Below are positions 9,393-45,600 of a stretch of DNA of 64,000 nt, piece by piece. Origin of the DNA: Paragordius varius (lineage: Eukaryota > Animalia > Nematomorpha); assembly GCA_964247055.1 (NCBI GenBank), contig OZ176055.1, forward strand, positions 2,914,001 to 2,978,000, in the 5' to 3' direction. A model generated the notes under the pieces. It did not search any database. It was not told where the DNA came from and saw nothing but the letters and a program-made list of their open reading frames with translations. Each line of letters starts with the position of its first letter. Position 1 is the first letter of the stretch. The position numbers and the translations under genes were made by a program.

Positions 9393-9428
<36 letters not shown>

Positions 9429-9612: not shown

Positions 9613-12600
9613 TTATGTCGTAAAAAATTTATCAATCATTTCTAGCGTTTCGTGTGCATCTACCCGAACAGAAGAAATGGATGATTCAATGCTTAGGGGA
9701 GAATACATGGATGCCATATCCTTAGCACATCTCTCATTACGACCAAGTAAAGAGGTCAGTCTACCCAAAACTTGCGTCGCATATAATTGACAATCTATTT
9801 CATCGTTTTGACTTGCTTGTAAGTCATTTAGGAATGCAATGCGTTTATCTCGTGTGTTAGTGGATTCGTCCATATTAAATATTTGATTAATATTTTGAGG
9901 AGTGGGAATCATTTCTAGATCAATAGTGCCTAAATTTGGTTTATCCATTTGGAGATCGGATGCTAAACAATCAACAACCACATTGGCCACATCTATCAAT
10001 ATAGTAGCATAACGGGGATCATTGACAAATTTTAGGAGGAATGTTTGAAAGTTCTCCATTATACGCTGTCTCTCAGTTTTAAATGTGTTTTTACTCTCCT
10101 TCTTGGAATCATATATTTCTATTATAATGTTTAATTACCAAGAAAAAATATTTAAAATTAAATATATACAATTTATAGTTTCTTTTTTTTTAATTAAGAC
10201 AAGGGCTTAAATATCATAACATGTGAAAACTATAAAACTCGCCTGCTCAACAGTAATGATGGAGAGATTTAGTAATTTTGGGATTAGAACTCTAACCTTC
10301 AACACATATAGTGTGAGAGTCAGGCGCCCTACCTATTATACCCTCCCACCTACCAAAAAAGATAATATATATATAGAAAAATTAAAAAAAAAACATTCAT
10401 TTTAAAGTCTCTTTTTTCCTTTTTTATTAAAGGGTAATTAAATTGTATCCGGACTTGTGAAGGCTTTAACACTAGCCTGCCCAGGGCTGACAGTGATAAT
10501 GAAATGCGTAGTTCCGGGCTTCGACCTCAGAAACGCATGGGAGAGTCCGGCGCCTACCTACTATACCATCAAGCCTCTATATAAGAATAATTAAGCAGAA
10601 AATTTAAGTTTCAAAATCAAATTACCATTTTCATGTTCCATATAGTGATCATCCGCCATAGGATTTGATGTGTATAAATTGCACCATCGCCCAGTTAAAA
10701 CAGTTCGCAATTTATTGTGTCGTATAAGTTCACGGAAAAAACTTACCGTAATCTATGCACAAAGGCATACATGCAATATAAAATACATAAGGAAATCAAA
10801 AATTATATAACTAATGTGATAAAAATGTTTACTTGTGGATGCTTAATATTGCGTTCATATTTGCTAAATACTTTATCGAATGCTGCATTGAAATCATATT
10901 TCCGTAAAAATCGATCAAAATCTTCGACAGATGGTCCAGGTAGCCCCTTTTTTCGCTTTGGGTCCAAATTGATTGTCATATTATCCTAGAGGATTTGGTT
11001 ATTACATATACTTAAATAAATTTTTAAACAAACATTAAACATATATATTATGTGGCTTCTTACCTCAAGGAGAAAAACATTCGTTTCATCATTGACCTCG
11101 GCACCACTTATTAAACCAATTTCAAAATTGTTTCTGTCATTATTAAAACTGGGTTGAGTTTGCGACAACAAGGCATTATCTTTATCTATCAAAGTTGATG
11201 GCACATTGGAATCTTGATTTTCAAAATAACGTGTTAATCCCCCGTTAAATATGGGCGTTGGATTTGTGTTATGTAAGAGTTTTTGGGTCGATAACTCCAT
11301 TTTACGGCGTTTAGTTTGGGATGGTTCTTCGCTACGTTTTTGTGATATAGAGAGTAATCCTTCCGTCATTCCGACACAAATGTGCTCATCGTTTGGCTAA
11401 AAGTGTAATAAAATTTAAACTTAAACGCTACTTTTCTGAAATTATCACATTAAAAAATAATTGTCCTAACTATACTATTTATAGTTTCAATTCACCCTTG
11501 AACAATTCAAATTCACCCTAAAATAAATTATGTGTTTTTCAAGATTAAAAATTACCTATATTTTTTTATATTTTTAAAAAAATGTGATGTTTATTATTAA
11601 TATAATATTGAAAAAATAATAAACTATGCCATAAGAATATATTTATGATTAATGATGAATTACACTGGACAACAATTTTTTCTGCCACTCGAGTTTTTTA
11701 CATTTTTTGATATTTAGTATCATTCTAACAGTAAATCCGAAATAAAAATTATAACCCGATGGAAGAATTTTGTATAATTTTATTTTTTTGATTATGTTAT
11801 CAAAATTTTACTAAAAAATGTTTTTCTTTGAAAATATACAAGTAATGTCCATTTGTAATATATCATTCGAAAGAGTAATAAAAACTCTTTAAAATGCATA
11901 CTAAGTATTACATCGACAGTTAATATTGGACACAAAGAGCGACAAACGCGCGAAGCGAGAGCATTTTTTTTAATTATTATATTTTTAAAACTAATGGATG
12001 AAAATAGCTCAAACTTTGTTTAGATGGTGATGAATTTCCAAAAAAGATAATACAAGAAAGTTTTTATGATTAAAACATTTTTTTATTGCTTTTATGTTAC
12101 TCAAAACAGCCATTTTTAAGTTTTTTGTTTTTTAAAAATTACCATCTCATCAATATTTATTTATTTTCTTTACGAGGCTGATAATTTCGAAATTTTAAAG
12201 ATAAAAACAAAGTTTAAGGTATTTTTGATCTTTTATAGCCATTATGTAATAAATTTACAGTTATAACTATGCATTTTAGTATCTACTAGGTAAAATATTT
12301 ATGATGATAATAATTTTTATTAAAAAAATAACCAAAAGCTTTTTCAAACATTTTTTTTAAATTAAATACTAATATAACCCTAATAATTATATTAAAATAA
12401 TTTATATGATTTTCAAATTAGTTTGTCTGTAAAAATTTTTGACTTATTTAAGGATTGAAAATTTCGACCATTTAATTCCAAATAACTTTTACATCCGATT
12501 GATCTAAGTGACTTACTACCATTTAAAAGATGCAGTTTTTTGAGCTCTTTCGAATGATATAAAATACATGGCTTAATATTTAAAACTTTTTTTCTAAATT

Positions 12601-14745
12601 TCGAGTTTAATGTTAAATCGGGACCAAAAATTATCGATAAACTCTAATATAAAAAAATTCTTTCATGCTAGATCAATTTTCTTTTCAGATATACTAATTA
12701 TGTACTTTAATGAAATAAATTTTAAATTTACAAGAATGGCAGTTAAAAACAGTTAAAATTTGTTGTCTAGTGTTATGTTAGCCCGAAAACACAAAATTTA
12801 TTTTTAGGGTGAATTTGAATTGGGGCGTATTTGAATTATAAATGGTGTAAATTTTTATTTAGTTAATGAGGCTTGTGGCGACTATATAATTTACAATGAA
12901 AAACTAGTGCTATAAAACCCGAAAATAAGTATGTTAGCTATTTTTAGCGTAAAAAAACATGATGGAATAGGCGACGCATCATTTATACAATAAAGAAACA
13001 TCGGAAATATTTTATTAATGCAGTTTTTCAAAGAATGTACAATATTTCGCTTAACACTCAGCCATATATTACAATAATTGATTGCGAACGAAAATACAGG
13101 CATTACAATAAGGAACTGCCAAATTTGGTAAATTATATGCAAAGATTTTAAGCCAAAAAAATTATATAGAAATACATACTGAGATTGCCAACGAAAGAAT
13201 CGGTGATGGATATGATATGGTATGAACAGTTTCATAATTTGATAAATCATGTATGCGTAATTGCCTAATATTGAGAAGCAAATACGAATTGTATTTATAT
13301 AGAAAAAAAAACAAAGTAAAAGATTATTTAAATTTTTTAAAATTAATATTGTCAATCCTTATTTGACAACCCAATACGATAAGTTATATAAAAAAAAGTT
13401 ATAAAAAATATGGTTATCTATAAAAATATTTGTCTCTTAATATATTTTTTTTTGTAATTTACAGTATCAATATTTAGGAATTATTGAATTCCAAACCAAA
13501 ACCCGAAACCATTATTTATCCATTAAAAAACGCTTTTTAAGTTTTAAACTCAAACCGTTTTCTCAAATAAAACCTAAAAGTTTATATTTCAAGAGTCTAA
13601 TGTACCGCAAAAATTGAACCTGAATTACCCTTCAATATTACTCTTTTGAAATAAAAAGTCCAAAAAATTATCATATATACTTATCTAAACTTCCTGTGAT
13701 GAGTTTTGGAGATGATGTGGACATACCAGCCAAAGATAAGCAGGTTATAGTTTTAGCATGTAAGCCGGCAAAAGTATGTAAACATTTTGATGTGTGAGCC
13801 ATATCCCATACCTTTACACAATTCCCACCTTTGGCAAAAATAATCTTCATTAGTAAAAACTTAATAAATAAAGTATGGCGTATTTGTTCCGATTACCTGC
13901 TATATATATATATATATATGTGGCGTTTCTACCCTAAATGTAAATTTAATTAATTTGCTTAAAATGGTCTATGATTTTGGGTCAAAGTAATGAATGTAAC
14001 CTTATTATTATTGCATTTGGGAAAAAATGATTGAAAAAATAACAGTTTCAAACTTTTTGCGGAAAACTATTTAAATCACTAAAAAAACTGAAGAATTATA
14101 TTTAATAGTTTTAAGGGCAAACCTAATTCAATCAAAATTTCGGAGCAAATTTTAACCAATTTTTAATTTTAAGAATAAGATATATTTGTTTAAGAGAAAA
14201 GGATTTTCTAAAAGTCTCACAACACTGTTTATTATAAATTTCAGCAAAACTAACCTTTATTTCATATTTTTACCATTCAAAACCCCTGTAATAAATTGCT
14301 AAAATGTGTATTTGTACACTCATAAACTTTAATAACAACAAAGTAAATAAATATAGAAAATAAAATAAAATATGAAAAATAATTAAGACTTTCAACAAAT
14401 GCAATGTGTACATACATACCTGCCGTAAAAAATATTTTATCGTTGAGGAAAAGTAGAACATCTTCAATGGGTGCTCCGTGTTTTACTGATATCGAAGCCT
14501 TGTTATCTATATATAAAAAGGATTAATTAGTAGAAATACAATTATAAAACATAAACATCATCATTAAGCGATATTCCAAAATAATTTTCAAGATAGTATA
14601 GGAAAGCTCTATAATGAAAAAAAAACAATTTATATTTTTTTAATCACAAAATTTATGAAATTATCAATAGCATTTTGCATATTACATATTCGGCACTCAG
14701 AGTTTTAATAAAAATAGCCGAAAATTTTGAGATACATAAAAATTA

Positions 14746-14806
<61 letters not shown>

Positions 14807-15318
14807 TTGCTATACATCAAAAAAATTTTTCTCAATTTTTTTTTAAATTGTATTTATATAAAACTTGAAAGATGTATATTTAAACCTTGTGATCTAAAAT
14901 CTACAACTTGAGCCGTTTGATCATATGAACCGGACAGAAAAGCGTCAAATGTATTAAATGCTTGACCGCATCTTATGTAATCCTATTCGCAAAAATAAGT
15001 AGTTTATAGCTCGAAATGTGTTAAAAGTAGATTATTATATAAAAGTATTTTTTTTAACTTGAGTGCAAAAAAACAAAATAGATATTATAATGATATGTAT
15101 AGGATTTTCATGGTGTTTGAATTTTGATAAATATATATATATATATATATATATTCTAATTATTATTTGGGGCTTAACAATAACTATAAAAATATAGTTA
15201 AATAAAATATTTTATTTTTACTTTAATTTTAAGTAAAAAACGCGACCACTCAGTAGAAATTCGCACTATATAGATATTAAAAGGATTTTTATGGTGTTAA
15301 ATATTGATACAACTGACC

Positions 15319-15361
<43 letters not shown>

Positions 15362-17066
15362 TTTGGGACTTAATAATAACAAAAAAAATAGAATTTAATT
15401 AAATATTTGATTTGTGGTAAAAAACTTTTGTTAGATAAAGTTTTACTTTTAATTTAAGTAAAAAACGCGGCCATTTAGTGGATCACTATAAGAATATTAA
15501 ATATACAATATATTTTGATAAATTAAAATTTAAGAGTATTCATTCAAAGACTATAAACTCTTAGAAAATTTTGTTTTTTTGACCAAACCTTAAATTTTTT
15601 AAATTGGTCAAAAAGCAAGATACCAACTGAGATTCTTTACATAAATATTTATCTCTTCAAAGAAAATACTAAATTTGACATGGTGTTTTCAATTTTATCA
15701 AATAAAAATCAATAACAAGAATAATAAGATAATGTGATATAAACAATTAATAAATTTACATTAGAGCGCACTCATCAAAAAATAAATAAAAATTAATTAG
15801 TAATAACCGTGTGTTTATGATAACTCCCTAGAGTAGATCCGGTTGCAATATCCCAATATTTGATTGATTTATCATCCGATGCGGAAACAATCCGATATTT
15901 GTTGTGTGAAAATTTGGTTACATGTACTTCTCTACACAATTTATTAATGAATTTATAATTGAATTTTAGTTACATTTTCAAAAGTTAACGAATAAAAGGC
16001 ATAATAAGCTAATGCCGTCATAAAGAATTAAATATTTATTATTTATGAAATTTACAATATAATTAATATGTAGCATTAATAATATTTTAATCATATTGAT
16101 ACATAAGTAGAAATTTATATTAAAATAATAAAATAAAAAAGACTTTTTTAAAGTGCGGATCATATTTTTAAAAATTATATAAAGATGGTCAAATTTTGGC
16201 GTAAAACAAATCCCTTAATTACGATACAATGATAATCTATGTAAAATTTCGCGAGTTAAGGTAGTAGCACTAATGTTAATTTTATTTAACTAAGTGGCTG
16301 AAAAATACCCTAAAATTTATAATTTAAAAAGTCATCTTTATTATTTAAATAAAATTTTGTTCTGAGGTAATAGATATCGTTATCGGCATCCACCTATGCA
16401 AAAAAGTATTTTTTGGAGATATTATATACTATTCGAACTTAGTTTAATGTACCCCACTTATAGACAACATTTTGGTTGCTATTGGTACAATATGTGAATT
16501 TTATTACTTTAATAAAAAAACATATTTGCAAACACGATATAAAATATGCGAATAATAGGCATAATAGAACGCCTTCCGGTGGTAATTCTATTCGAAATTA
16601 TAAGATATTAGCTTAAAATATTTTAGCTAAATTAGAAATAATCACCCTACGTGACCAATAAATTCTCGCAGCTGCGATTTGGTGGTAAGAGAAAAGAGTT
16701 TTATCATATTTTCATCAGCGCCAGACACAAGTAATTCGCCATCTGATCTAAAAGAGCCACCAAAAGCTGCAGATTTAAAATTGCTAAATGTATTAAGTAA
16801 TTTATCGTGAGCTAGATCATAAAGTTGAATCTTAAATGTAAATCAAAGGAATAAACTTTTGTGGCATATGTGATAGCTAATTTAAGGTTTATTGCATTCA
16901 AATTCAAATATTGTATGTTGCTTGCTGATTGTTTAATAGTAATAGGAATCTAAAAATTATTTATACGACAAACTTTATAATTAGACCAATATAAGGATTC
17001 AGCAGTCAAAAACTTCTCGTTTCCTCGGATGTCCCTATAATCAGTGGGTTTGTAAGCATGCGACAT
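9613..17066 (-). CDS. UTP15: U3 snoRNA-associated protein 15 (WD40 plus UTP15 C-terminal domain), ~676 aa, 12 exons: 17066-16974, 16949-16857, 16830-16646, 15931-15808, 14982-14886, 14506-14420, 13828-13681, 13264-13180, 11396-11064, 10985-10833, 10752-10626, 10118-9613
   Basis: All junctions are GT-AG and in phase (2031 nt). Diagnostic stretches: MSHAYKP...ESLYWSNYK, FRSDGELLVSG, VSASDDKSIKYWD, SGSYDQT, HGAPIEDVLLF, GGNCVKVWD, HAKTITCL, LITGSLD, ICVGMTEGLLS, DFDRFLRKY, ITVSFFRELIRH..LTGR, FLLKFVNDPRY, EIDCQ. These are colinear with UTP15 as I recall it. Confidence 0.95.
10405..10571 (-). mobile_element. tRNA-derived SINE copy (UTP15 intron 11), with a second partial copy at ~10235-10345
   Basis: Similar to 45601-45781 over ~170 bp, including the tRNA-like head GGTAGG-CGCCGGACTC. 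Confidence 0.7.
11471..12849. mobile_element. MITE family X (palindromic, 18-bp subterminal repeats) interrupted by a nested TIR element
   Basis: Left arm has ttcaaattcaccct repeats; right arm has agggtgaatttgaa...aaatggt. Matches the uninterrupted copy at 17543-17844. Confidence 0.65.
11663..12772. mobile_element. 1.1-kb non-autonomous TIR DNA transposon nested in MITE X (UTP15 intron 8)
   Basis: TIRs CACTGGACAACAATTTTT / AAAATTTGTTGTCTAGTG, with further inverted matches inside (ctgcca/tggcag; atcattcgaaagag/ctctttcgaatgat). No coding capacity seen. Confidence 0.65.
14748..14800. repeat. (TA)n microsatellite, the longest of many in the window
   Basis: About 26 uninterrupted TA units. Similar tracts lie near 1020, 1540, 9400, 13905, 15135, 15325, 18030, 31630 and 40570. 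Confidence 0.95.
15079..15492 (+). repeat. Degenerate ~200-bp direct tandem duplication with an internal (TA)n in each unit (UTP15 intron 4)
   Basis: tagatatta..ggatttt.atggtgtt...(TA)n...ttatttggg.ctta...taagtaaaaaacgcg.cca.t.agt occurs twice in succession. Confidence 0.6.
16831..16856 (-). other. 26-nt GT-AG intron (UTP15 intron 2)
   Basis: GTTTATTCCTTTGATTTACATTTAAG. Retention causes a frameshift; removal joins LAITYATK|IQLYD with no gap against UTP15 as I recall it. Confidence 0.85.
16950..16973 (-). other. 24-nt GT-AG intron (UTP15 intron 1)
   Basis: GTTTGTCGTATAAATAATTTTTAG. Retention reads VCRINNF then an in-frame TAG stop. Confidence 0.85.
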
Positions 17067-17542
17067 GACCGAACAATAATATTCCTGATGAGTTAATATA
17101 AGTATTTCAGAGAGAGGACATTGCCTTAACACTTGAAGACAACACATTTATTACCGTACCTAAAAATTGGGCTCGTTAGACAAGCTTTTTAAAATTTAAT
17201 ATTTTAAAAAATATTGAATAAAATAAGAAAAGTTTGCACTTATAGAACATTAATCAACCGAAATATAATAAAAATTCATTCGAAAATACTTGATATTACT
17301 TATTAGGTAAAACACACAGCTAAAAATTTACCAATCAACGTGCATGAGCTAAATATAAAAATAATGCAAAATATACCACTTATTTTTATATCAATGTTAA
17401 ATGTGGTTTTAATAAAAAAGTAAACTTAATTTTAGACTCAGAATCAACTAAACACGATATTTTGCAAAAATGTTGTAAAATAGAAATGGCGTCCATATAG
17501 TTTACGGAACTTTTACTAAATTTAGTCAGATATATTTGCTTT

Positions 17543-19987: not shown

Positions 19988-20300
19988 TGTTATGTATAAT
20001 AACTTAATTGTTTTTAACTTAACTCAATTAATCTTATTTTAGTTACCTTTGAAAATATAATTTGTGCATAATACACCTTTGTACTTGTTACGCTAAAAAT
20101 GTATATTATCTTGGTTGTGAATGCTTTTACCTAAATAATGTAATATTGAACCTTATGCAAATATATAACTTGTGAATGCTTTCATCTAAATATTGAAATA
20201 TTTAACCTTATGCAAAAATGCAACCTCGCTCTAAAACTATATATAATGGAACATTGTTTTTTATGATATAAAAATAAATTCCTTTTTTCCGCTTATTACA
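19988..20300 (+). repeat. 5' LTR (313 bp)
   Basis: Identical by eye to the 3' LTR except for 6 extra nt near its 5' end. Contains an internal ~45-bp direct repeat (tgtgaatgcttt...aaccttatgcaaa). Confidence 0.95.
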
Positions 20301-20344
20301 TTTGGCGCGGTCGATTTTTTTTGTATTACGTTGTATTCATTATT

Positions 20345-23131
20345 ATGGAAAAAATAAGTATTGAAAGTTATAAAATCAATAATAATTTTACGGAATATAT
20401 TAAATATTTACGAAGAAATTTAGTAATTAAAGGAATACAGGATAATAATGAAAATATTAAAGCCATCTTTCTTGCCCAATCCGGTATTGATAACATTTCT
20501 AAAATGGAAAAATTCTTTTACCCCGTTAATATTGAAAACATATCTTGGGAGGAGATTTATGAAGCTGGGGTGAAAATATTTCAGCCAACCAAAAATACTT
20601 TTTTATCCCGATTCGAATTTTTTAGAGCGGAACGATTAGCGGGTGAAGGATTCTTGGAATTTTTTATAAGACTCAAAAATATGGCCGCTGCATGTGAATT
20701 CAAAGGAAACGTTGACGAATTAATACGGGACGTGTTTATATGTGGGTTGAAGGAGAAAAAGCTAGAGACTGAACTGCTGAACAGGTACCCAAAGGCATTA
20801 GACAACGACATACCAGTGGGATTAAATAAGGTTCTAAATCTGGCATTAGCGTATGAAAATTCTCACCTGGAAGTGAACTCAGTGAGAGCAATATATAATA
20901 ATGAAAGTATTAATAATGGTAATAATAATGGTATTACTAATGGTAATAATAATGAAACTTTTAATGATGGTAGTATTAATAATAATGAAATATATCTGGT
21001 AAGACGCAAACCTGTCGTAAAATCGTGTTTTAAATGCGGTCGCGCCCACAAATACGGATGCTGCCCAGCGTTTGGGAAGGTATGTTTCAAATGTCAGGGT
21101 AGAAATCATTTCGGAAGCCAATGCCAAAACAAATATGCTGGCAATAACAGGTATGTGAATAATATCGTAAATAAACCTAAAATAAATGTAAAAATAAACT
21201 CAACCCACGTCGAAATGTTATTCGACACGGGGGCCGACATATCTTTAATAAATTTTAGCACGTGGGTTAAAATAGGAAAGCCTAAAATAAAACCCATTTA
21301 TTTTAACATAAACACTTATGATAATAATCCTTTACACATAATAGGAGAGACAACTGTAACTCTTGAATTAAATAAATTAAAAAAGATAACAAAATGCTTT
21401 ATTACGAAGAGACATCTTCCTCTAATATTTGGCATGGATTGGATCCAGCTATTCAATATCTCATTGCCTAACGAATTATATATTAATAAATTATATCACA
21501 CAAATGATATTTACAATAAATTTAAGTCTTTATTTGATAACAAATTGGGTTGTTGGAAAGGGGAACCCATAAAAATATTTTTAGAAAACAATAGTAGGGG
21601 ACGGGTATTTCCGGCTAGAAGGGTTCCCTTGGCCTTACAAGAGAAATTAAGTGAAGAGATCAAAAGGCTAGTATCCTTAAAAATTATTGAACCAGTAGAC
21701 CCCAAGCAATCTAAAATTTGTTGGTCCAGTCCTATAGTAAACGTATTAAAGTCAAATAATGAATTAAGAATATGCGCAGATTTTAAAGTGTCCATAAACA
21801 AATACATTAAAACACCTCAATATATAATACCCACATTTGATGATTTGATTTCCAAAATTTCACATGGTAAGACGTTTTCAACATTAGATTTAAAAGATGC
21901 TTATCTTCAGATTCCAGTGCATCCGGAATCTCAAAATCTTCTCACAATATCCACACCTCTTGGGTTTTTAAAATATACTAGGCTCCCTTTTGGTCTGTCG
22001 TGCGCACCTAGTTTTTTCCAACAAATCATGGATGAGCTATTAGGAGATTGTAAGGGAACAGCGGTCTATTTAGATGATGTAATTGTTACGGGGGAAACGG
22101 ATGAGGAGCATTATAGAAACCTAACACAAGTATTTGAAAGATTAGAACGAATGGGTCTTAAATTAAAAAAAGATAAAATAAAGCTTTTTCAACAGGAAGT
22201 AGAATATTTGGGGTTTACTATATCAGAAAAAAGTATAAAACCAGCGAGCAGTAAGATTAAAGCCATTCGCGAGTGTCCAGCCCCTAAAGATAAAACAAGT
22301 CTCCGTTCGTTTTTGGGCCTTTTAAACTTTCATTCACGATTTATACCTTCTCTAAATACAATTGTTAACGAACTCCATCAGCTAGCTGGTTCCAAAAAGA
22401 AATGGTGTTGGACCGAGGTACACCAAAATATTTTTGAAAGGGCGAAGCTATTAATAGGGAATAACAGCCGCCTCTTCCCTTTTAACCCCAGACTTCCCCT
22501 TATTCTAGAAACGGATGCATCTGGGGAGGGGTTTGGGGCCATTTTGTCGCACAGAACGTCGGAAGGTAAACGACCCATTGCATATTTTTCAAAAAAATGT
22601 TCCCCGGCAGAAAAAAATTATTCGGTTATAGAAAAAGAGGCAAAAGCCATTGTATTGGCCCTAGAGAAATTTAAAACATTTTTATATGGTAGAAAATTTG
22701 AGATTAGAACAGATCATAAACCTCTTATCAAATTATTCGGGCAGCAACGTGTATTAAGCGAGCTAAACAATAGTAAATTGCTTAGATGGATTTCAAAAAC
22801 ATCCATTTTCGACTTCAACATAATGTACTACCCAGGAACCGAAAATCTAGCAGATTCACTATCAAGACTACCAACTGAGATAACTGAAGAGTGTGACAAT
22901 GACGAGGATATAGTGCAGGAGGTCCGGTTGCTATGGTGTCAGGAGTTAAACTTAAACAAGGAGAGGGTGCTTAAGGAAACTATGAGCGATGAGACGTGTA
23001 AACAGATTAAAGCAGCACGAAAGACTAATGATTGGTCTCACCCGGGGGTGCAGTCCTATAAACCACTGAGGAATGATATCGAAGAATCATACGGCCTTCT
23101 ATATTTAGGTGACCGCCTTATTGTGCCTTAA
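20345..23131 (+). CDS. Gag-Pol polyprotein, first part (gag, two CCHC knuckles, protease, RT, RNase H), ended by a premature TAA
   Basis: CFKCGRAH...C and CFKCQGRNHFGSQC knuckles; LFDTGAD; YLDD; ETDASG; TDHKPL. Confidence 0.92.
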   Translation: MEKISIESYKINNNFTEYIKYLRRNLVIKGIQDNNENIKAIFLAQSGIDNISKMEKFFYPVNIENISWEEIYEAGVKIFQPTKNTFLSRFEFFRAERLAGEGFLEFFIRLKNMAAACEFKGNVDELIRDVFICGLKEKKLETELLNRYPKALDNDIPVGLNKVLNLALAYENSHLEVNSVRAIYNNESINNGNNNGITNGNNNETFNDGSINNNEIYLVRRKPVVKSCFKCGRAHKYGCCPAFGKVCFKCQGRNHFGSQCQNKYAGNNRYVNNIVNKPKINVKINSTHVEMLFDTGADISLINFSTWVKIGKPKIKPIYFNINTYDNNPLHIIGETTVTLELNKLKKITKCFITKRHLPLIFGMDWIQLFNISLPNELYINKLYHTNDIYNKFKSLFDNKLGCWKGEPIKIFLENNSRGRVFPARRVPLALQEKLSEEIKRLVSLKIIEPVDPKQSKICWSSPIVNVLKSNNELRICADFKVSINKYIKTPQYIIPTFDDLISKISHGKTFSTLDLKDAYLQIPVHPESQNLLTISTPLGFLKYTRLPFGLSCAPSFFQQIMDELLGDCKGTAVYLDDVIVTGETDEEHYRNLTQVFERLERMGLKLKKDKIKLFQQEVEYLGFTISEKSIKPASSKIKAIRECPAPKDKTSLRSFLGLLNFHSRFIPSLNTIVNELHQLAGSKKKWCWTEVHQNIFERAKLLIGNNSRLFPFNPRLPLILETDASGEGFGAILSHRTSEGKRPIAYFSKKCSPAEKNYSVIEKEAKAIVLALEKFKTFLYGRKFEIRTDHKPLIKLFGQQRVLSELNNSKLLRWISKTSIFDFNIMYYPGTENLADSLSRLPTEITEECDNDEDIVQEVRLLWCQELNLNKERVLKETMSDETCKQIKAARKTNDWSHPGVQSYKPLRNDIEESYGLLYLGDRLIVP

Positions 23132-23134
23132 AGC

Positions 23135-24289
23135 ATGAGGGTTGATGTTCTTAACTATCTTCATAAAGGTCACCCGGGTATACAGTCCATGAAAGCGTTA
23201 GGTAAGAGTGGTGTGTTTTGGCCGAAATTGAACCAGGATATCGAAAAATGGGTGCAAGGCTGCTTAAATTGTCAAAAGTCACGGTTCAACATTGCAGTAA
23301 GCCCGACGTATAAATGGAACCCGAACACCACCGTTTGGAAGCGATTGCATCTCGATATAGCGGGGCCCGTAGATAACCTTTACTGGGTCATACTTATAGA
23401 TCACTGCACCCGTTGGGTCGAAGTAGCACAGCTTAAAACAGTGAACTCGATCAGTATCTTGAAAGTTTTAGAAGGTTGGTTTGCACGATATGGCACCCCA
23501 GAGATGATCGTAACTGATAATGCGTCGTATTTTAAGTCCGGTGATTTTGAAAGAATATTAAGTTCCTCTAATATCAAGCATGTAACCTCTGCGCCATACC
23601 ACCCTCGGACAAATGGTTTAGTGGAAAGGGTCATTCAAACATTGAAATCGCACTATTATATGTGTTCTGAAGTAGCAGATCCAGAACGCCGGTTAAACCA
23701 GGTACTGTGGGCTTACAGATCAGCACATCACAATGGTATAAATGAGACACCTGCACGACTATTCCTAAAACGAAATATACCGACACCGTTGTCCTGGATG
23801 AAAGGCAAACCAAAGGATTATATCGATGGTACCTCAGATATTATACGTGAGTTCGTTCCAGGTGAGAAAGTGTTTATAAAAAATGAGTTGGAAGCTGGTT
23901 GGCGAGAGGGAAAAGTTGTAGAGCGGACTGGATTATTGTCCTACAATATCGAAGATAGAGGGAGTTTACGAAAGAATACGGATCAATTAAGAAGGCGAAA
24001 AGAAGGTCCCGATGAACTTAAGCTAGACGACCCGAAAGAATTGGAATCGGAACAACAGAATAATAATAATAATATCATAGCCACCCCATTGCATGGTCCT
24101 CCTATTGATGACAATATTAATAATGATGATACCAATCCTTCCCCGGATATTTGTCAAGATTTCCACAATAATCAGCAAAGTCCCAACGGCGATAAGATTG
24201 CAGAACCCCCAAGCTTTGAAGTACCAGTGGAGAGACGCTATCCTACCAGAAACCGAAAAGCCCCTGACAGATACACAAATCACTTTTAA
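23135..24289 (+). CDS. Integrase, in-frame continuation of Gag-Pol after the stop
   Basis: LHKGHPG...CLNC zinc finger; HLDIAGP, VTDNAS and NGLVER (DDE triad). Same frame as the upstream ORF (IVP*SMRVDVL). Confidence 0.92.
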   Translation: MRVDVLNYLHKGHPGIQSMKALGKSGVFWPKLNQDIEKWVQGCLNCQKSRFNIAVSPTYKWNPNTTVWKRLHLDIAGPVDNLYWVILIDHCTRWVEVAQLKTVNSISILKVLEGWFARYGTPEMIVTDNASYFKSGDFERILSSSNIKHVTSAPYHPRTNGLVERVIQTLKSHYYMCSEVADPERRLNQVLWAYRSAHHNGINETPARLFLKRNIPTPLSWMKGKPKDYIDGTSDIIREFVPGEKVFIKNELEAGWREGKVVERTGLLSYNIEDRGSLRKNTDQLRRRKEGPDELKLDDPKELESEQQNNNNNIIATPLHGPPIDDNINNDDTNPSPDICQDFHNNQQSPNGDKIAEPPSFEVPVERRYPTRNRKAPDRYTNHF

Positions 24290-38380: not shown

Positions 38381-39682
38381 AAGATTAACATTGGTCAATG
38401 TTATTTAGTCAAAAATCATAATGCCTTTCTGGTTGATTCTCCTTTATAAACTTCGGCCTTGTCCCCCCCCTGCCTGAAATAAATCTGATTAGATATATTA
38501 TTTAATAAATTAAATATTTTTATTTATTTTATATTATAAAATAGACTTATTTTACCATTTTAAGCAGTTAATGCATTAATCATTGAGATAACACATATTC
38601 AAAGGGTATATTTTAAAATGTTTTACGCAACATATTTTGGGTAGAAAATATCATTAAACAATTTTTATAGGTAGTCCCCGATAAGATTAAGATATACTGT
38701 CCTATTTAGGCATTTAAGTATAAAGGTATTAAAATTAAGTAATAGAAATTTTCATTTATGTTATTTTAATTTATGTTTCATAATTTTGACAGTCATAAAA
38801 ATTAACATAAAAATGTTTTCTCAAACTCTTAATTTTACAAGTATTATCAATATTTTTAAATTATTAACTAGGTAAGTGCCAGTACGCCTTGCAATAAAGT
38901 TTTTTATCAATACATTGAATTATATTTTTATATTTAATGTGTATACAAATATAAATAATTCTAGTCCCAAAACAGCTCATTTTAAATAAATGGCATTCAA
39001 TGACATAAACCAATAAATGAAAAATATCAGCAATAGTTCATAAATATCCATAATAAAGGTGATTACTAGTTATTAAAACATATGTTCCAGACAGTATCAA
39101 CTACCAATAAGAAAATTGATGTTTTTATCATTGTCGCTAACCAATCAAAACAATATTGGCTGATCAGTATCCAAATAAAAGCGGAAAAAAATAATTATTT
39201 TTTAAATTTAAAAATTTTAAATATTAATTCTATTGTTATATTAAATTATAGTTTAAACATATTGAGTATTGTACCACTCATTATATTTTATTATATATTG
39301 TAATTGCATGCTATGAAGAAACAATAGCATATGCTGACTGCTACAATAATTATTCTTTTAAACAACATTTTTCTACAAGCTATACATACAGTACCGTGTG
39401 GTAAAAAATAACAAATGATTAAAATTAAAGATTTGTTCCCCCCTATTATTTTACAGTAATTTAGCTTTTTTAATTTTAAACTAACTATTTTCTATACCAT
39501 ACGCTACTGTTTTTTAGCAATTGAAATAAACCAAATGCGGATTGTCCATTCTCTATCACAACATTTTATATTCTCATACATATATACAAATTTTCTCACA
39601 AAAAAAGATAATATTTTTATGGCTAACACTATCCATACAATCCTATATTGAGTTATGAGATAACAAACACCATTATATCACC

Positions 39683-42600
39683 ATGTGGGAAGAGACCGGT
39701 TCCATCATATACAATAATTTTATTCCAATTGTCTGCGTTATAATTAGCAGCGCAATTTTAATAAATTGTTGTCTTTTACACCATAATAATCACCATAATA
39801 ATATGAAAATTGATGTGAATTCTTTGTTTAATCGTATATATCAATTTATTTGGCACATGCCAACCCAATCCAAATCTTATATATTCAGGCTTGTTAAACT
39901 AAAAACGGACCCTCTTCCTGGCCCATATAATTTACCCTTTTTGGGGTATTTACCCTTCATAACGAAAAAACCTCACTTTCATTTCACGTTTAACATGGTG
40001 CCTAAATTTGGAAAAGTATTTTCATTTCGATTCGGTCATCGACAAGCTGTAGTGCTTAATGATTGGGAAAGCGTTAAAGAAGCATTCGTTTCCAAGGGAA
40101 CAACTTTTTCGGGACGGCCCGATTTATTTTTATTTCGTATGCTGAACAAAGGACATGGTAAGACAATTTACACTGAGTTTTATATGGCCTAAAGATAGAT
40201 TTTTTATGACTACACATAATTTTTTGTATAAATCTTATTTTTGATAAAGCTACGGCCATCAACCTCATGTCATTATCATAATATTATTGTGTAACACTAT
40301 ATTTTTACCTATTTTTACTCATACATTTATGAACTAGTCACATATCGTAAATACCCTCAAAAGATATAAAACTTTTTATATTAATTTTTTTGCCTAAAAG
40401 TAGATATATGTAAAGCGGCTATAAAAAACAATATAAGTTTTACGTATAGGTGTAAGAAGTATAAAACAATATTTGTGGATATCGTAAAATAACATAAAAA
40501 TAAAATATGATTTATTAATTCTCAAATTTTCGCCATGGCATCATCAGGAGATACAGTTAGGTAAATATATATATATATATATATATAAAACAATAAATTT
40601 TAAATTGAAAAATAAGTAAAATCATGATTGATACTACTTAAATAGGAAAAAATCGCAAAGAAACCGTTAATGGACAGAAGAAAGAAACAAACTTAAAACG
40701 AAACCGTTATGTTATCAAAAACGTGCATTTTAATTAAGTAAAAATTAAAATTGTACGGTTAAAACGTAAAAGTATAACGACAAATATTTTTATAATAAAA
40801 CCCTACTTTTAAACCCTAGTTTTTCCCATATAAATTATTCTATAAATAATAAAGTATAAAACTGTTTGTGTTTCCAATATAGATTTCTATTTTTAATTTG
40901 TAATATGTAACAATTATATATAATTCAAAAAAACTGATTTAAAAAATATGGTTGTGTATTTTAGAAAAATATTTGTCTTACGTTTTGCTGCGCCTTATTT
41001 TAAATTTTTGGTTCCAGACTCTAAAACACAGAGGCGAAGCTAGGGGGGAGGAAAGGGGGGCTGATGCACCAGGCGCCATAGTTGAAGAAGCGCAGGATTA
41101 GAAAATCTTTTGATTTTATTACAAAAATATATGTATTTTAAAGTTATTTAAAGAATACAAAAAAATCACCAATTTATGAATGGTCATATCCACGGTTTGA
41201 AATTGATTATTTTTTAATATGCAAGGGGTTGCATGGAGGGGGAGAGGGGTACCATTACGGATAGCTACGCCTCTGATCCAGATCATTTATATGGCGAAAA
41301 TTTGAGAATCAATATATATTGATTTTTACGTCATTTTACGACGATTTCCACATCGTTTTCATTACATACCCTCGTCTTTACCCACTCAATTTCTGTTTTT
41401 ATCATGTTACATTTTTTAATATCATATTAAACTCTAATTGTGGCCTAGGCAAAAAATATTTTTTGAATGTTTTTGTCAAAAAACGGTATAAATTTTAAGT
41501 AATTATCCTATACAAAACTTAAATTTTTTAATAACAATACAGTATAGCCAAAAAATGTTTGAATTTAGGGCTAATTAATAGTGAAGGTACCTACCGAAAA
41601 CATCAAAAGAAATTTATCATGAACGCGGTGAAAGAAGTTTTTGACGATCCCTCTTTCCATACCTTTTTATCTAATGAGGTATAAACTAATAATTTATTAA
41701 CATGCATTATGACTATCGTACATATATACACTGTGTCCAAAAAAATTTTAAAAGTATTTTTTTCATGAGATAGCTTATAACCAGCCTTTTCATTTGCCAT
41801 TAAAATCTTTATTTGTTTACGACCTAGTTTTAAAATTTTGTAAGAAAATCGAAATGGCGCAAAAAGTGAAAATTAAGGATAATTCAAAAAATAATGATAA
41901 ACTACATATTATCAATACAATATAGCCTAAAATCATATAGTTAGGGTGCAAAATCGCAGTTTAAAAGATGACGTTTTTATTTTAATACACTTAAAAGACA
42001 AAATTTTTATATGAAACTATATTAAAATATTTTTTTTAATTATTTACTAGCTAAACTCATATCTTAACATTCATATTTTACGCAGTAAAAAATTTTTAAT
42101 ATAAAATATTTTTTTTTCATGTTTTGTCATCTGGTTCATGAGTAAATAAAATATTCATACTGTTTTATTTTGCAATTTACAGAGGGGAAATTATAAAGTA
42201 TATAGAATTTAAAAGTAGCGGAATATCAACCAACGATCCTTGCAATTCCCTGTAACAAGTTCGTTTTTACACAAATTAATATTTTTACTGGGATATGTAT
42301 GGATTTTAGTTAATTTTCCAGTACTTGTAATTATTTTGTATTAATTTATACTTTTTAATTCCGGCTCATGTGAAATTGCAAAATAAAACAGTAAATTTTT
42401 TAAGGCTCTATAACTATACTATATTTATTCTTATTTTCATTCATAAAAATAATTTAGCCTATAATAAATTCGTATAGTTTCATACGTTTTATTGAACATA
42501 GTGTCACCGCCAATTTTACATTGACAAATCTAAAATTATTCCACCACTTTGTTAAAACTGTCTCCTCTTAGAGCTTGAAAATACTTAATTAATAACTTTT

Positions 42601-45600
42601 CATTGCTAATTTTTTATGGGAAATATTTAAATAGTAGCACCCTTAATATTTAGTTCATATTTAGGGGTCATTGTAAGGGGGGCATTGTTACAGTTATGTA
42701 TATGTAGAATTGACAAAAATTCGTTTTTAAATGATTATAATGTTTGATATGTCAACTTTCAACATGCGCATTTTTTAGCATTAAAATAGTAATAGCTTAT
42801 TTATTGTAAACAATTAAAAACAAAGTAAAATCAATTAAAAACGTATATCTGACAATTCTAAACATACATGACTGTAATTGCACTTGATTCTAAATACAGT
42901 AAAAATTTTAATTAGACGGAAAAAATGTAAAAAGGAATATTTTTTAAAAAAAGACAACTATACTTCCAAAACCTTAATGTTTCCAATATTTTAATTTGTA
43001 AAATATACGATTCATAAGGTCAGCCATATGCACCTCTAATTCATACTTTACAATTTTAACGATGATGTAGCAAAAAATCAATAATGAAAAAGTATGGTTG
43101 TCTTGGTTTATTATACGTTTTGTCCGTATAATTTCAATTTTTTACTGTATAGTTTTCCAAACTCATCCATTATTACATTTTTACAAAAAATCCGTTTAGC
43201 TTTTTTTATTATAATATTTCATGCTAGATGAAATATTTATGTGAAGCAATCGAAAAAGTACGTGATTCTGAAATTACTAAACAACAAAATCCAAACCCTA
43301 GTATAGACTTACATAAATTAATTCAATGTTGTTTTATTAACGTGGTTTGTGGAGTGGTGTTCGGATGTCGATACGAATACGATTCACCTGTCATCGAAAA
43401 ATTTATGAATGAAATTGACAAAAACTTTGAACTTGTTGGTAAAACTTTTTTGTTGCAAATTAAGCCATTCTATAATCCTTAAGTGTTATTTATTAAGTGT
43501 AAAAAATATTGGCAAAACGAGAAAATCAATATGTATAAAATGTACATATTTTGGGACAGAGTGTCATGTTATGCAAAATTTGGTAAAAGTTGTAAATGAA
43601 TATATAGCAGTCAAACAATGTGAAAAAAAATCTTTCTTGGTTGCCTATTCAATCATAAAATAGAAATGTTATCATTTTTCAACGTTGTTTCATAAATATT
43701 TATTTCGCATACATTTTTACATAGTATAGGTTATAAAGTAAGAAATAGAGTCTAAAACAGGGGTGTCCAACGGCAGCATTTTAAACCTTTAAAAACGGTA
43801 GGCCGCATATGAAATATATAAGTGGGCCTTCATATATAATTTATTAGATTTCAAATATAAGAATGTAATATGCAAACAATTCAAATAATTTTTTCTAGTT
43901 TTTGTCAATTGAACACATAAAATAAAAAAATTGTTTAAGAAATATTGATTGATTTTACTAAGATTTTATAAGTATATTTTTACAAATTATGTATTCAGAT
44001 TTTTCGCGGGTTACATGTTTTCCACCCCTGGTCTAAAAATTATCGTGGTTAAAATTTAATTAATTTATTTTTATCAAAGGTCAAAAAGGCGTTTTACTAA
44101 ATTTTTTCCCACCATTTATCCGTGATGCGCCGTGGGTGAGGGGACATTTCGCATACCAAGAAATATTTGATTCAATCGAATATCTATTGGCATTTACCGT
44201 TAGGCATATCAAAGATGTTTTGGATGATAGCAGCGTTGATACATCGAACAGACCAAAAAATTTGGTTCAAATCTATGCAAATTACATTAAAAAATATGAA
44301 AATGAGATGATTTTATTAGATCCAGAATTATCCGAAAAACATCCATTAAAATTTGATATGCCAAAACGACCTCTGAAAACTATAGAAACTTTGATCGGAG
44401 ATGGATATTTACAAGAGTTCACAACAGGAGAAGAGTTGTGCACAGATAAAAAAGCTGATGAAACCCCCTTCGAAGAAATATTACCTAAATTTCCAGGGCT
44501 AGAAGATAGCAGTTTTGCCAGCTTCCTTATGAGAGGAAACAAGAACAATGGTTTTACTGGTAAATGTTTAACACGTTTTTAATTTTGTTGTTAATCATAT
44601 TTAGGTTAATTAGGAAATTTAATGTTTTTAAATACTTTTTAAGACGTTTAAGGTGTATTTTGGTAAAAAATACCACAAGTTTATTTTTCCAAACAATTTG
44701 TCATTTTATCAATATGTCTTTGGGTTTTGTCAGAATTAGAACCTCGATATTCAGAAAAACTGTTTTATTAAAGAAATATCCAAGATCTATTTGTTATATT
44801 ACTATAATTTAATAAATATTTTGGTTATTATTACAATATCATTTAATCCATTTGGTAAAAAATTTCCTCTATAAATTTAAATGGTTTATGCACATTTATA
44901 TATTCAAACCATATTTTTGAATTTTTGCATCCTAAATTTTGGGCGATTATATGCGTGATTTGCATCGATTCTCCAATTATAAATACTAACATTAAACCAA
45001 GTCCTTCACTTTAATTCAAATAATTCTATAATCTAAGCTGCAAAATACCATAATATCATAAATTGGCATTAGGTTTAGATATGATTATCAGTCTTATGGA
45101 TATGTTTTTGGGGGGAACAGAAACAACACAAACCGCGTTCCGTTGGGGTTTATATTTTATGGCTAAGCACCCTTCTATTCAAGATTGTGTTTGGGCCGAA
45201 CTTGATAGCTATGCCAGAGAACAAAAGGACCCCAATGTTTTCAAAGAATTTACAATATCCTATGCCAATCGTAATGCCTTACCATACACGAATGCTACTA
45301 TAATGGAGATACAGAGGAGAGGTAATATAATTTTAGAGTTCTTAAACCCTAAAAATAATTTGGACAGCATTTTGATGATCAACATGTGTCTAGGGGTCTA
45401 TTCGATTTTAAAAAACCAATCACCGTACTTTAAAGGCACTTTTGATTTTATCCGTTTCATTTATTTGATTGAGATTAAACCCAAGGCTTAATTTATAAAG
45501 CAATGATTATATGTGTAAGCGTAAATGAAATATCTGGGGCATGATTAAATTTAAATGGTTACAATCCATTTTTATGAAAATTATATAAATACTACAGTTA

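What the first reader, a model, noticed from the sequence alone, without database searches (positions are those of the whole stretch)
16831..16973. Two ultra-short (24 and 26 nt) GT-AG introns in an intact UTP15 gene
Seen in the sequence: the first three UTP15 exons (93, 93 and 185 nt) are separated by only 24 nt (GTTTGTCGTATAAATAATTTTTAG, ending in an in-frame TAG) and 26 nt (GTTTATTCCTTTGATTTACATTTAAG, frameshifting). Excising both gives a protein that aligns without gaps to UTP15 as I recall it. The other nine introns are 78-1783 nt. Established: most animal spliceosomes need about 40-70 nt or more, and introns under 30 nt are known mainly from ciliates, nucleomorphs and dicyemids, where nearly all introns are tiny. 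From memory, human UTP15 has introns at these same codons and phases. Inference: ancestral introns have shrunk below the usual metazoan limit in a repeat-rich genome that still has kb-sized introns, implying a spliceosome handling both extremes. Gene finders with a minimum intron length would miss or truncate this gene.
Basis: partly seen in the sequence, partly recalled or inferred. Interest (0 to 1): 0.9.

Follow-up and report, generated by a model that had tools for sequence, protein, structure and literature searches.

The report
Two tiny introns in UTP15
The first three coding pieces of an ordinary ribosome-assembly gene (UTP15) in this AT-rich, repeat-rich animal genome are separated by what are very probably real introns of only 24 and 26 bases, a size published for just two other animal groups, but the cutting could not be shown because no RNA data cover the gene.

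Summary
On the minus strand an intact 12-exon UTP15 gene (676 aa, one terminal stop) starts at 17066. Exons 1-3 (93, 93, 185 nt) are separated by GT-AG segments of 24 nt (16973-16950, ending in an in-frame TAG) and 26 nt (16856-16831, frameshifting). The other nine introns are 78-1783 nt.

The spliced N-terminus hits only human UTP15 among solved structures. The alignment runs ungapped across both junctions, at the same offset as exon 3 alone. Short-read contigs from two samples contain both segments without indels, so assembly collapse is excluded. Variants fall mostly on third codon positions of the model's frame.

Direct proof is missing. The four runs laid are DNA, and no RNA run holds the locus. 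Conservation of the intron positions in other species was not tested.

The best reading is two genuine ultra-short spliceosomal introns (confidence 0.85). This scan has already flagged the same class (20-33 nt, at gene 5' ends) in at least nine other stretches of this genome, which earlier notes attribute to a horsehair worm; I could not verify the taxon. Introns under 30 nt in animals are published only for myxobolid myxozoans and Dicyema. The 5'-clustered, bimodal layout resembles flatworm microintrons.

The parts
16974..17066 (-). UTP15 exon 1 (93 nt, 31 codons, ATG at 17066-17064)
   Evidence: It aligns to human UTP15 N-terminal residues within the spliced query.
16950..16973 (-). Ultra-short intron 1: 24 nt, GTTTGT...TTTTTAG, phase 0; its last three bases are an in-frame TAG
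   Evidence: It is present without indel in short-read contigs of runs X1 and X2, and its first 19 nt in X3 and X4. The junction is ungapped against human UTP15.
16857..16949 (-). UTP15 exon 2 (93 nt, 31 codons)
   Evidence: It is homologous to human residues about 31-61. Three of five variants are synonymous third-position changes.
16831..16856 (-). Ultra-short intron 2: 26 nt, GTTTAT...ATTTAAG, phase 0; retaining it shifts the frame
   Evidence: It lies inside contigs of all four runs with no gap and no difference. The junction is ungapped against human UTP15.
16646..16830 (-). UTP15 exon 3 (185 nt)
   Evidence: It matches human UTP15 residues 64-121, E 1.7e-14, and gives WD40-type Pfam hits.
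15932..16645 (-). Intron 3 (714 nt, GTGATT...TGTAG), the first ordinary intron
   Evidence: In sample S2 the sequence diverges within 3-17 nt of its acceptor (loose ends).
15808..15931 (-). Exon 4 (124 nt)
   Evidence: WD40 hits.
14886..14982 (-). Exon 5 (97 nt)
14420..14506 (-). Exon 6 (87 nt)
13681..13828 (-). Exon 7 (148 nt)
   Evidence: WD40 hit.
13180..13264 (-). Exon 8 (85 nt)
11064..11396 (-). Exon 9 (333 nt)
10833..10985 (-). Exon 10 (153 nt), start of the UTP15_C domain
   Evidence: Pfam UTP15_C profile positions 18-43, E 0.0022.
10626..10752 (-). Exon 11 (127 nt)
   Evidence: Boundaries were chosen by frame and splice-site strength, so this is the least certain exon.
9613..10118 (-). 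Exon 12 (506 nt, ends with TAA at 9615-9613)
   Evidence: Pfam UTP15_C profile positions 71-112, E 2.1e-6.

Best explanation
The 24-nt and 26-nt segments are genuine U2-type GT-AG spliceosomal introns, the first two introns of a functional UTP15 gene. Each is probably recognised across the intron itself (intron definition). The 5' splice site is GTTT(G/A)T. The branch adenosine would lie only about 10-14 nt downstream of it. A short T-rich stretch and the AG (TTTTTAG, ATTTAAG) follow within about 12 nt. Removing both introns joins three phase-0 exon ends into one frame that encodes the first blade of the UTP15 WD40 propeller. They belong to a genome-wide class of 20-33-nt introns at the 5' ends of genes, which coexist with ordinary introns of up to several kb.

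Shown here: the DNA anatomy, the intact gene, the homology across both junctions, and the reality of the DNA in two samples. Inferred: the splicing itself, the branch sites, and intron definition.
For: 1. Both segments start with GT and end with AG. All 11 introns of the model are GT-AG, and the spliced CDS is one 676-aa frame.
2. Retention is incompatible with the protein. Intron 1 ends in an in-frame TAG and intron 2 shifts the frame.
3. The spliced N-terminus hits only human UTP15 in the PDB. Junction 1 aligns LYWSNYK|IPITIK to LYWNNYK-TPVQIK. Junction 2 aligns AITYATK|IQLYD to AVTASSR-IHIYG. There is no gap at either junction. The offset (-1) equals that of exon 3 alone.
4. The rest of the gene is intact and colinear. 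Exons 3, 4 and 7 give WD40 hits. UTP15_C profile positions 18-43 fall in exon 10 and 71-112 in exon 12.
5. Short-read contigs of X1 and X2 are colinear with the window through both segments. An independent, more diverged sample (X3, X4) carries intron 2 and the first 19 nt of intron 1 with no indel and no listed difference, while its intron 3 diverges a few bases from the acceptor.
6. Nine of 12 variants seen in exons 1-4 fall on third codon positions of the model's frame, and 8 are synonymous. By my own arithmetic the binomial P is about 0.004.
7. The layout matches the class that this scan noted in other windows of the genome. Those notes are leads, not independent proof.
Against: There is no RNA evidence. 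The four runs that hold the locus are DNA. The contigs run into intron 3, and loose ends at GATC sites suggest Hi-C libraries. The RNA runs under the same species label hold none of its words.

The PDB E-values for the spliced N-terminus are modest (0.006-0.011), and HMMER places a compensating 2-residue gap pair in the poorly conserved middle of exon 2.

Intron 1 has no yUnAy-type branch motif.

Conservation of the intron positions in orthologues was not tested. The zero differences in the mini-introns between samples rest on only about 45 nt.
Confidence: 0.85

Rival explanations
1. There is a single 143-nt intron from 16973 to 16831, and 'exon 2' is skipped, or is only a minor cassette exon. 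Splicing would then be of ordinary size.
For: A 143-nt intron has the same GT and AG ends and also keeps the frame, because 24 + 93 + 26 = 143 nt would be removed between two phase-0 ends. No RNA data exclude it.
Against: Exon 2 is open for exactly its 31 codons and is homologous to human UTP15 residues about 31-61 (IPITIK to TPVQIK; AITYATK to AVTASSR). Without it the protein would be 31 residues short before the position where exon 3 aligns (human residue 62), and would lack strands of the first WD40 blade. Three of the five variants in exon 2 are synonymous third-position changes.
Confidence: 0.06
2. The locus is a decaying or silent UTP15 copy. The two segments are small insertions that happen to look like introns, and a working copy lies elsewhere.
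For: No expression could be shown for the 5' part. The C-terminal exon is so diverged that a search of 1.8 billion representative proteins found no relative.
Against: The other ten exons form an uninterrupted frame with canonical splice sites. Variants are biased to synonymous sites, which points to purifying selection. Two independent insertions would each have to begin with GT, end with AG, and sit exactly where the alignment to human UTP15 has no gap. No other UTP15 has been noted in this genome by the scan, though that is weak evidence.
Confidence: 0.05
3. It is an assembly or sequencing artefact: the introns are really longer and were collapsed, or the segments are long-read indel errors.
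For: None was found. X1 and X2 may be the same sample the assembly was built from (caveat printed).
Against: Short-read de Bruijn contigs from X1 (1162 nt, 15917-17078, 0 gaps) and X2 span both segments. A second sample (X3, X4) has contigs covering 16638-16968 with 0 gaps.
Confidence: 0.01
4. The segments are removed or bypassed by something other than the spliceosome, such as DNA-level excision in somatic cells (as for ciliate eliminated sequences) or translational bypass.
For: The size range of 20-30 nt overlaps that of short ciliate eliminated sequences. No RNA data are available.
Against: The ends are GT...AG rather than TA...TA. The segments are present in the DNA of all four runs. The other nine introns of the same gene are ordinary spliceosomal introns with similar splice-site motifs.
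Confidence: 0.01

Closest known systems
Ultra-short introns of myxobolid myxozoans (Henneguya, Thelohanellus, Myxobolus) and of Dicyema japonicum (PMC13644364)
   Same: They are animal GT-AG spliceosomal introns below 30 nt (medians 22-27 nt), lying between conserved exons and lacking a real polypyrimidine tract. That paper infers ordinary U2-dependent splicing.
   Different: In those lineages nearly all introns are tiny and the genomes are compact and TE-poor. Here only 2 of 11 introns are tiny (the gene's median is 416 nt, the maximum 1783 nt), and the surrounding DNA is repeat-rich (27% GC, retrotransposons in the window). The 5' site there is reduced to GTa; here both read GTTT. That paper's main text does not mention nematomorphs.
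Flatworm microintrons (Opisthorchis felineus, Clonorchis, Schistosoma, Echinococcus, Macrostomum; PMC6530080)
   Same: There is a discrete short intron class beside a kb-sized class in large genomes. The microintrons lie next to one another and preferentially at the 5' end of genes. They are under-represented in annotations because of default minimum intron lengths. This is the same architecture as introns 1 and 2 here.
   Different: The flatworm short mode is about 37 nt (with a second at 90 nt), against 24 and 26 nt here. The lineage also differs if the earlier notes' hairworm assignment is right.
Tiny introns of ciliates (Paramecium about 25 nt, Stentor 15-16 nt) and nucleomorphs (titles and abstracts; cited in PMC13644364)
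   Same: The size range is the same, and they show that a canonical spliceosome can remove introns of 15-30 nt.
   Different: They are unicellular lineages with uniformly tiny introns, not a mixture with kb-sized introns in an animal.
Nematode short introns (C. elegans mode near 47 nt, 3' site UUUUCAG, no branch consensus) - from my own knowledge, not tested
   Same: They are AT-rich and have a T-run plus AG as the main 3' signal (intron 1 ends TTTTTAG). Nematodes are the sister phylum of hairworms.
   Different: Nematode introns are roughly twice as long. Introns under 30 nt are not a recognised class there.

Membership tests
U2-type GT-AG spliceosomal intron | GT at the 5' end and AG at the 3' end | tested here: met
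   Intron 1 is GTTTGT...TTTTTAG and intron 2 is GTTTAT...ATTTAAG.
U2-type GT-AG spliceosomal intron | Removal restores one reading frame colinear with orthologues | tested here: met
   The spliced frame is 676 aa. The alignment to human UTP15 is ungapped across both junctions, at the same offset as exon 3.
U2-type GT-AG spliceosomal intron | Absent from mature mRNA | not testable with these tools
   No RNA run holds the locus. All four runs laid are DNA.
U2-type GT-AG spliceosomal intron | Branch-point adenosine and pyrimidine stretch upstream of the AG | tested here: inconclusive
   By eye, intron 2 has TTGAT (yUnAy) with its A 12 nt from the 3' end. Intron 1 has no such match but has a T5 run before the AG. 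Two introns are too few for a motif.
Genome-wide ultra-short intron regime (Myxobolidae, Dicyema) | Individual introns shorter than 30 nt between conserved exons | tested here: met
   They are 24 and 26 nt, and the flanking exons are homologous to human UTP15.
Genome-wide ultra-short intron regime (Myxobolidae, Dicyema) | Most introns tiny (median below 30 nt) | tested here: not met
   In this gene 2 of 11 introns are tiny, and the median is 416 nt. The first coding exon of the P450 gene in the window spans p450 profile positions 2-82 without interruption.
Genome-wide ultra-short intron regime (Myxobolidae, Dicyema) | Compact, repeat-poor genome | tested here: not met
   GC is 23-36%. The window holds a Ty3/gypsy-type pol ORF and reverse-transcriptase-like ORFs, and earlier notes report Helitrons nearby.
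Flatworm-type microintrons | Discrete short class coexisting with kb-sized introns | tested here: met
   The sizes are 24 and 26 nt against 78-1783 nt, with nothing in between, in this one gene.
Flatworm-type microintrons | Adjacent to each other and at the 5' end of the gene | tested here: met
   They are introns 1 and 2 of 11. The feature is described in PMC6530080.
Flatworm-type microintrons | Short mode at about 33-37 nt | tested here: not met
   The sizes here are 24 and 26 nt, against a 37-nt peak in O. felineus.
UTP15 (U3 snoRNA-associated protein 15) | N-terminal WD40 propeller colinear with known UTP15 | tested here: met
   Exon 3 matches human UTP15 residues 64-121, E 1.7e-14. The N-terminus matches only UTP15.
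UTP15 (U3 snoRNA-associated protein 15) | C-terminal UTP15_C domain (PF09384) | tested here: met
   Exon 10 covers profile positions 18-43 (18.1 bits) and exon 12 covers 71-112 (28 bits), and the two are colinear. Each piece alone is under the 33.1-bit whole-protein cut-off because the domain is split over three exons.

The most novel reading that the evidence does not exclude
This animal, a horsehair worm according to earlier notes of the scan, would be a third, independent metazoan lineage with spliceosomal introns under 30 nt. It would be the first in which they form a discrete 5'-end class inside a large, transposon-rich genome whose other introns reach kilobases. One spliceosome would then routinely handle 5' splice site to branch distances of about 10-14 nt as well as ordinary ones. 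A corollary follows: gene finders with minimum intron lengths of about 30-40 nt truncate many such genes. Part of the low universal-gene completeness reported for hairworm genomes (71.6% BUSCO in Gordionus montsenyensis) would then be an annotation artefact rather than gene loss.
Probability: 0.55. Interest if true: 0.75.

Novelty: new variant of a known kind. Interest (0 to 1): 0.55.

Why it matters
Introns under 30 nt were long held to be absent from animals. A 2026 survey of 51 genomes found them only in myxobolid myxozoans and Dicyema, both with compact genomes in which almost every intron is tiny (PMC13644364). A gene that mixes 24- and 26-nt introns with a 1.8-kb one, in a repeat-rich genome, separates 'tiny introns' from 'genome compaction'. 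It asks how one spliceosome copes with both geometries.

There is also a practical side. Default minimum intron lengths in gene finders and aligners would break or truncate such genes at their 5' ends. That bears on completeness scores and on claims of gene loss in this phylum (my inference, not tested here).

This particular locus adds one well-conserved housekeeping example and evidence from two DNA samples. It does not add the RNA proof that the class still needs.

Tried and rejected
1. RNA evidence. The one read-laying run used the four runs that hold the locus, and all proved to be DNA. X1 and X2 are colinear through the 714-nt intron, with loose ends at GATC sites. X3 and X4 run 8 nt into intron 3 and continue into AT-rich, intron-like sequence beside exon 4. 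The RNA-labelled runs X5-X9 hold none of the words of either half of the gene.

2. Orthologues, for intron positions and for the taxon.
- A search of 1.84 billion representative proteins with the last exon gave only one spurious hit.
- The search for homologous proteins with exon 3 found no candidate in its length range.
- An exact look-up of the 148-aa terminal ORF found nothing on record.
- No single exon is long enough to bring full-length UTP15 within the 0.55-1.75 length filter.

3. Exons 1 and 2 alone against the PDB gave no hits. Only the joined N-terminus hits UTP15.

4. Taxon check with the Ty3/gypsy-type pol ORF gave only distant relatives of 24-39% identity, which is uninformative.

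5. A pattern scan for further mini-introns in the window gave many candidates, almost all in low-complexity AT-rich frames. None besides the UTP15 pair has homology support. P450 5' candidates were examined and dropped because the frame breaks and because the P450 first exon is uninterrupted.

6. Rfam found no snRNA or any other RNA family in the window.

7. Literature. No held paper mentions intron sizes in Nematomorpha. Neither the 2023 Current Biology paper on nematomorph genomes that I recalled nor the Schistosoma mansoni genome paper was found under the identifiers I tried from memory.
Full report
**What is there.** The minus strand between 17066 and 9613 carries a complete UTP15 gene. 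Reading the sequence, I laid out open frames and splice sites. This gave a 12-exon model with a 2031-nt CDS that encodes 676 aa and has a single terminal stop. Exons 1, 2 and 3 are 93, 93 and 185 nt long.
- Exons 1 and 2 are separated by 24 nt (16973-16950, GTTTGT...TTTTTAG). The last three bases of this segment are an in-frame TAG.
- Exons 2 and 3 are separated by 26 nt (16856-16831, GTTTAT...ATTTAAG), which shifts the frame.
- The remaining nine introns are 714, 825, 379, 591, 416, 1783, 78, 80 and 507 nt.
- All eleven introns are GT-AG.

**Identity of the gene.** Several results point to UTP15.
- Exon 3 alone matches human UTP15 residues 64-121 (PDB 7mq8 chain LJ, E 1.7e-14). Generic WD40 proteins score higher only because their repeats add up.
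- Exons 3, 4 and 7 give WD40-propeller Pfam hits.
- The UTP15-specific C-terminal domain PF09384 is found colinearly, with profile positions 18-43 in exon 10 and 71-112 in exon 12.

The protein is longer than the human one (676 aa against the 518-residue chain in 7mq8). The extra length lies in exons 9, 11 and 12. The C-terminal exon is so diverged that a scan of 1.84 billion representative proteins found no relative.

**Is it more than chance?** The bare pattern is not unusual here. A script found well over a hundred GT..AG segments of 18-40 nt that join two open frames of at least 25 codons in this AT-rich window, mostly in low-complexity frames. Homology is what makes these two special. Exons 1 and 2 alone are too short to hit anything. 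I therefore searched the PDB with the first 76 residues of the spliced model.
- The only two hits at E <= 10 are human UTP15 (7ruo_A, E 0.0064; 7mq8_LJ, E 0.011).
- Junction 1 aligns LYWSNYK|IPITIK to LYWNNYK-TPVQIK without a gap.
- Junction 2 aligns AITYATK|IQLYD to AVTASSR-IHIYG without a gap.
- HMMER places a compensating 2-residue gap pair in the variable middle of exon 2, so the net offset is unchanged.
- That offset (model residue n = human residue n-1) is the same as the one given independently by exon 3.

**Is the DNA real?** I laid the Logan contigs of the four runs that hold the locus on 15701-17200.
- X1 has a 1162-nt contig covering 15917-17078 with no gap.
- X2 has overlapping contigs through both segments.
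- These are short-read assemblies, so a long-read indel error or a collapsed longer intron is excluded. They may, however, come from the same animal as the assembly.
- X3 and X4 are a second sample under the same species label and are 95-99% alike in the exons.
- Their contigs cover 16638-16968 and 15805-15934 without gaps.
- They contain all of intron 2 and the first 19 nt of intron 1, with no listed difference.
- Beside exon 4 they run off into different AT-rich sequence, including an (AT)n tract, 3-17 nt from the acceptor of intron 3.

The long intron thus changes quickly between the samples, while the tiny ones do not. That fits tight constraint on the tiny introns, but it rests on only about 45 nt.

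**Coding constraint.** Twelve single-base variants were seen in exons 1-4 across the runs. Nine fall on third codon positions of the model's frame, and eight are synonymous. By my own arithmetic the binomial P is about 0.004. Three of the five variants in exon 2 are synonymous. Exon 2 is therefore translated in the frame that requires both segments to be removed.

**What could not be shown.** All four runs laid are DNA, not RNA.
- X1 and X2 are continuous through the 714-nt intron, and their loose ends at GATC sites suggest Hi-C libraries.
- X3 and X4 extend 8 nt into intron 3 and continue with intron-like, not exon-3, sequence beside exon 4.
- The RNA-labelled runs of the species hold none of the sampled words of either half of the gene.
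- A run under another organism label (X10) holds 35% of the words of the 3' half but was not listed for the 5' part.

Splicing itself is therefore inferred. The same holds for the claim that human UTP15 has introns at these codons. No exon is long enough to bring full-length orthologues within the length filter of the protein search. Neither intron-position conservation nor the taxon was tested here.

**Best explanation and rivals.** I read the two segments as genuine U2-type introns recognised by intron definition (confidence 0.85). The evidence is:
- the canonical ends;
- the impossibility of retention (a stop codon in one, a frameshift in the other);
- the ungapped homology across both junctions;
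- the intact remainder of the gene;
- the synonymous-biased variation.

The rivals fare as follows.
- A single 143-nt intron that skips exon 2 keeps the frame, but it removes 31 residues that are homologous to human UTP15 and are needed for the first propeller blade (0.06).
- A silent pseudogene is hard to square with ten clean exons, purifying selection and two 'insertions' that both carry GT...AG at gapless positions (0.05).
- An assembly artefact is excluded (0.01).
- Non-spliceosomal removal has nothing in its favour (0.01).

**Comparison with what is known.** A September 2026 paper states that introns under about 30 bp were considered absent from animals. It finds them, among 51 genomes, only in myxobolid myxozoans (medians 22-27 bp) and Dicyema japonicum (PMC13644364). 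Its main text does not mention nematomorphs or flatworms. Those lineages have compact genomes in which nearly all introns are tiny, and that is not the situation here.

The closest architectural match is the flatworm microintron class (PMC6530080). It has the following features:
- a discrete short mode at about 37 nt beside a mode at about 3 kb;
- microintrons adjacent to each other and concentrated at the 5' end of genes;
- frequent omission from annotations because of default minimum intron lengths.

The UTP15 pair shows the same layout at about two-thirds of that length. I therefore rate it a new variant of a known kind.

**Context from the scan.** Earlier notes on other pieces of this same genome report the same class (20-33 nt, GT-AG, at gene 5' ends) in at least nine other stretches. 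They attribute the genome to a horsehair worm or a close relative. One note reports RNA support at another locus, and two report longer introns at the same codons in a related worm. I did not verify these. My only taxon-related checks were two.
- The window's 27% GC and its repeat load match the published Gordionus montsenyensis genome, which has 26.93% GC and 63.8% repeats.
- A retrotransposon search was uninformative.

No held paper discusses intron sizes in Nematomorpha.

**Verdict.**
- This locus is a clean, conserved housekeeping example of a class the scan has already found repeatedly.
- The class is interesting. This instance adds confirmation from two DNA samples but not the missing RNA proof.

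Noticed in passing
window 20267-24286 (+): There are two long open frames of 954 and 385 aa in a GC-richer stretch (36%). The first matches Ty3/gypsy-type pol proteins (reverse transcriptase, RNase H, integrase domains) at only 24-39% identity, with no close relative in the protein collection.
   Followed up: partly
window 39659-46766 (+): This is a cytochrome P450 gene spread over about 7 kb. Its first coding exon covers p450 profile positions 2-82 without interruption, so not every gene here starts with tiny introns. Candidate 27- and 34-nt GT..AG segments near 43140-43230 do not give a consistent frame.
   Followed up: partly
window 62301-63956 (-): Open frames with a weak TGS-domain hit (E 0.005) look like an MRPL39-type gene that runs off the window end.
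   Followed up: no
window 49493-52361 (+) and 54008-54268 (+), 60757-61558: There is a series of open frames with reverse-transcriptase-like sequence. They are probably non-LTR retrotransposon copies and include repeated fragments.
   Followed up: no
window 15932-15950 (acceptor end of UTP15 intron 3), runs X3/X4: The second sample carries different sequence here. One contig diverges 3 nt upstream of the acceptor into a stretch containing TACTAAT. Another diverges 17 nt upstream into an (AT)n tract. This contrasts with the unchanged mini-introns.
   Followed up: partly
window 9613-11396, run X10 (organism B): A 2024 run filed under another organism label holds 35% of the sampled words of the 3' half of UTP15 but was not listed for the 5' part. 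It could be 3'-biased RNA of the same animal or DNA of a relative. I could not lay it.
   Followed up: no
window 14748-14801, 15322-15357, 9396-9426: Perfect (AT)n microsatellites of 15-27 units lie inside UTP15 intron 4 and just downstream of the gene.
   Followed up: no
window 10626-10752 and 9613-10118 (exons 11-12): Compared with the Pfam UTP15_C profile and my recollection of the human protein, this UTP15 carries about 30 extra residues at the exon 11/12 boundary and a long, diverged C-terminal tail. The exon 11 donor was chosen on frame and site strength only.
   Followed up: partly
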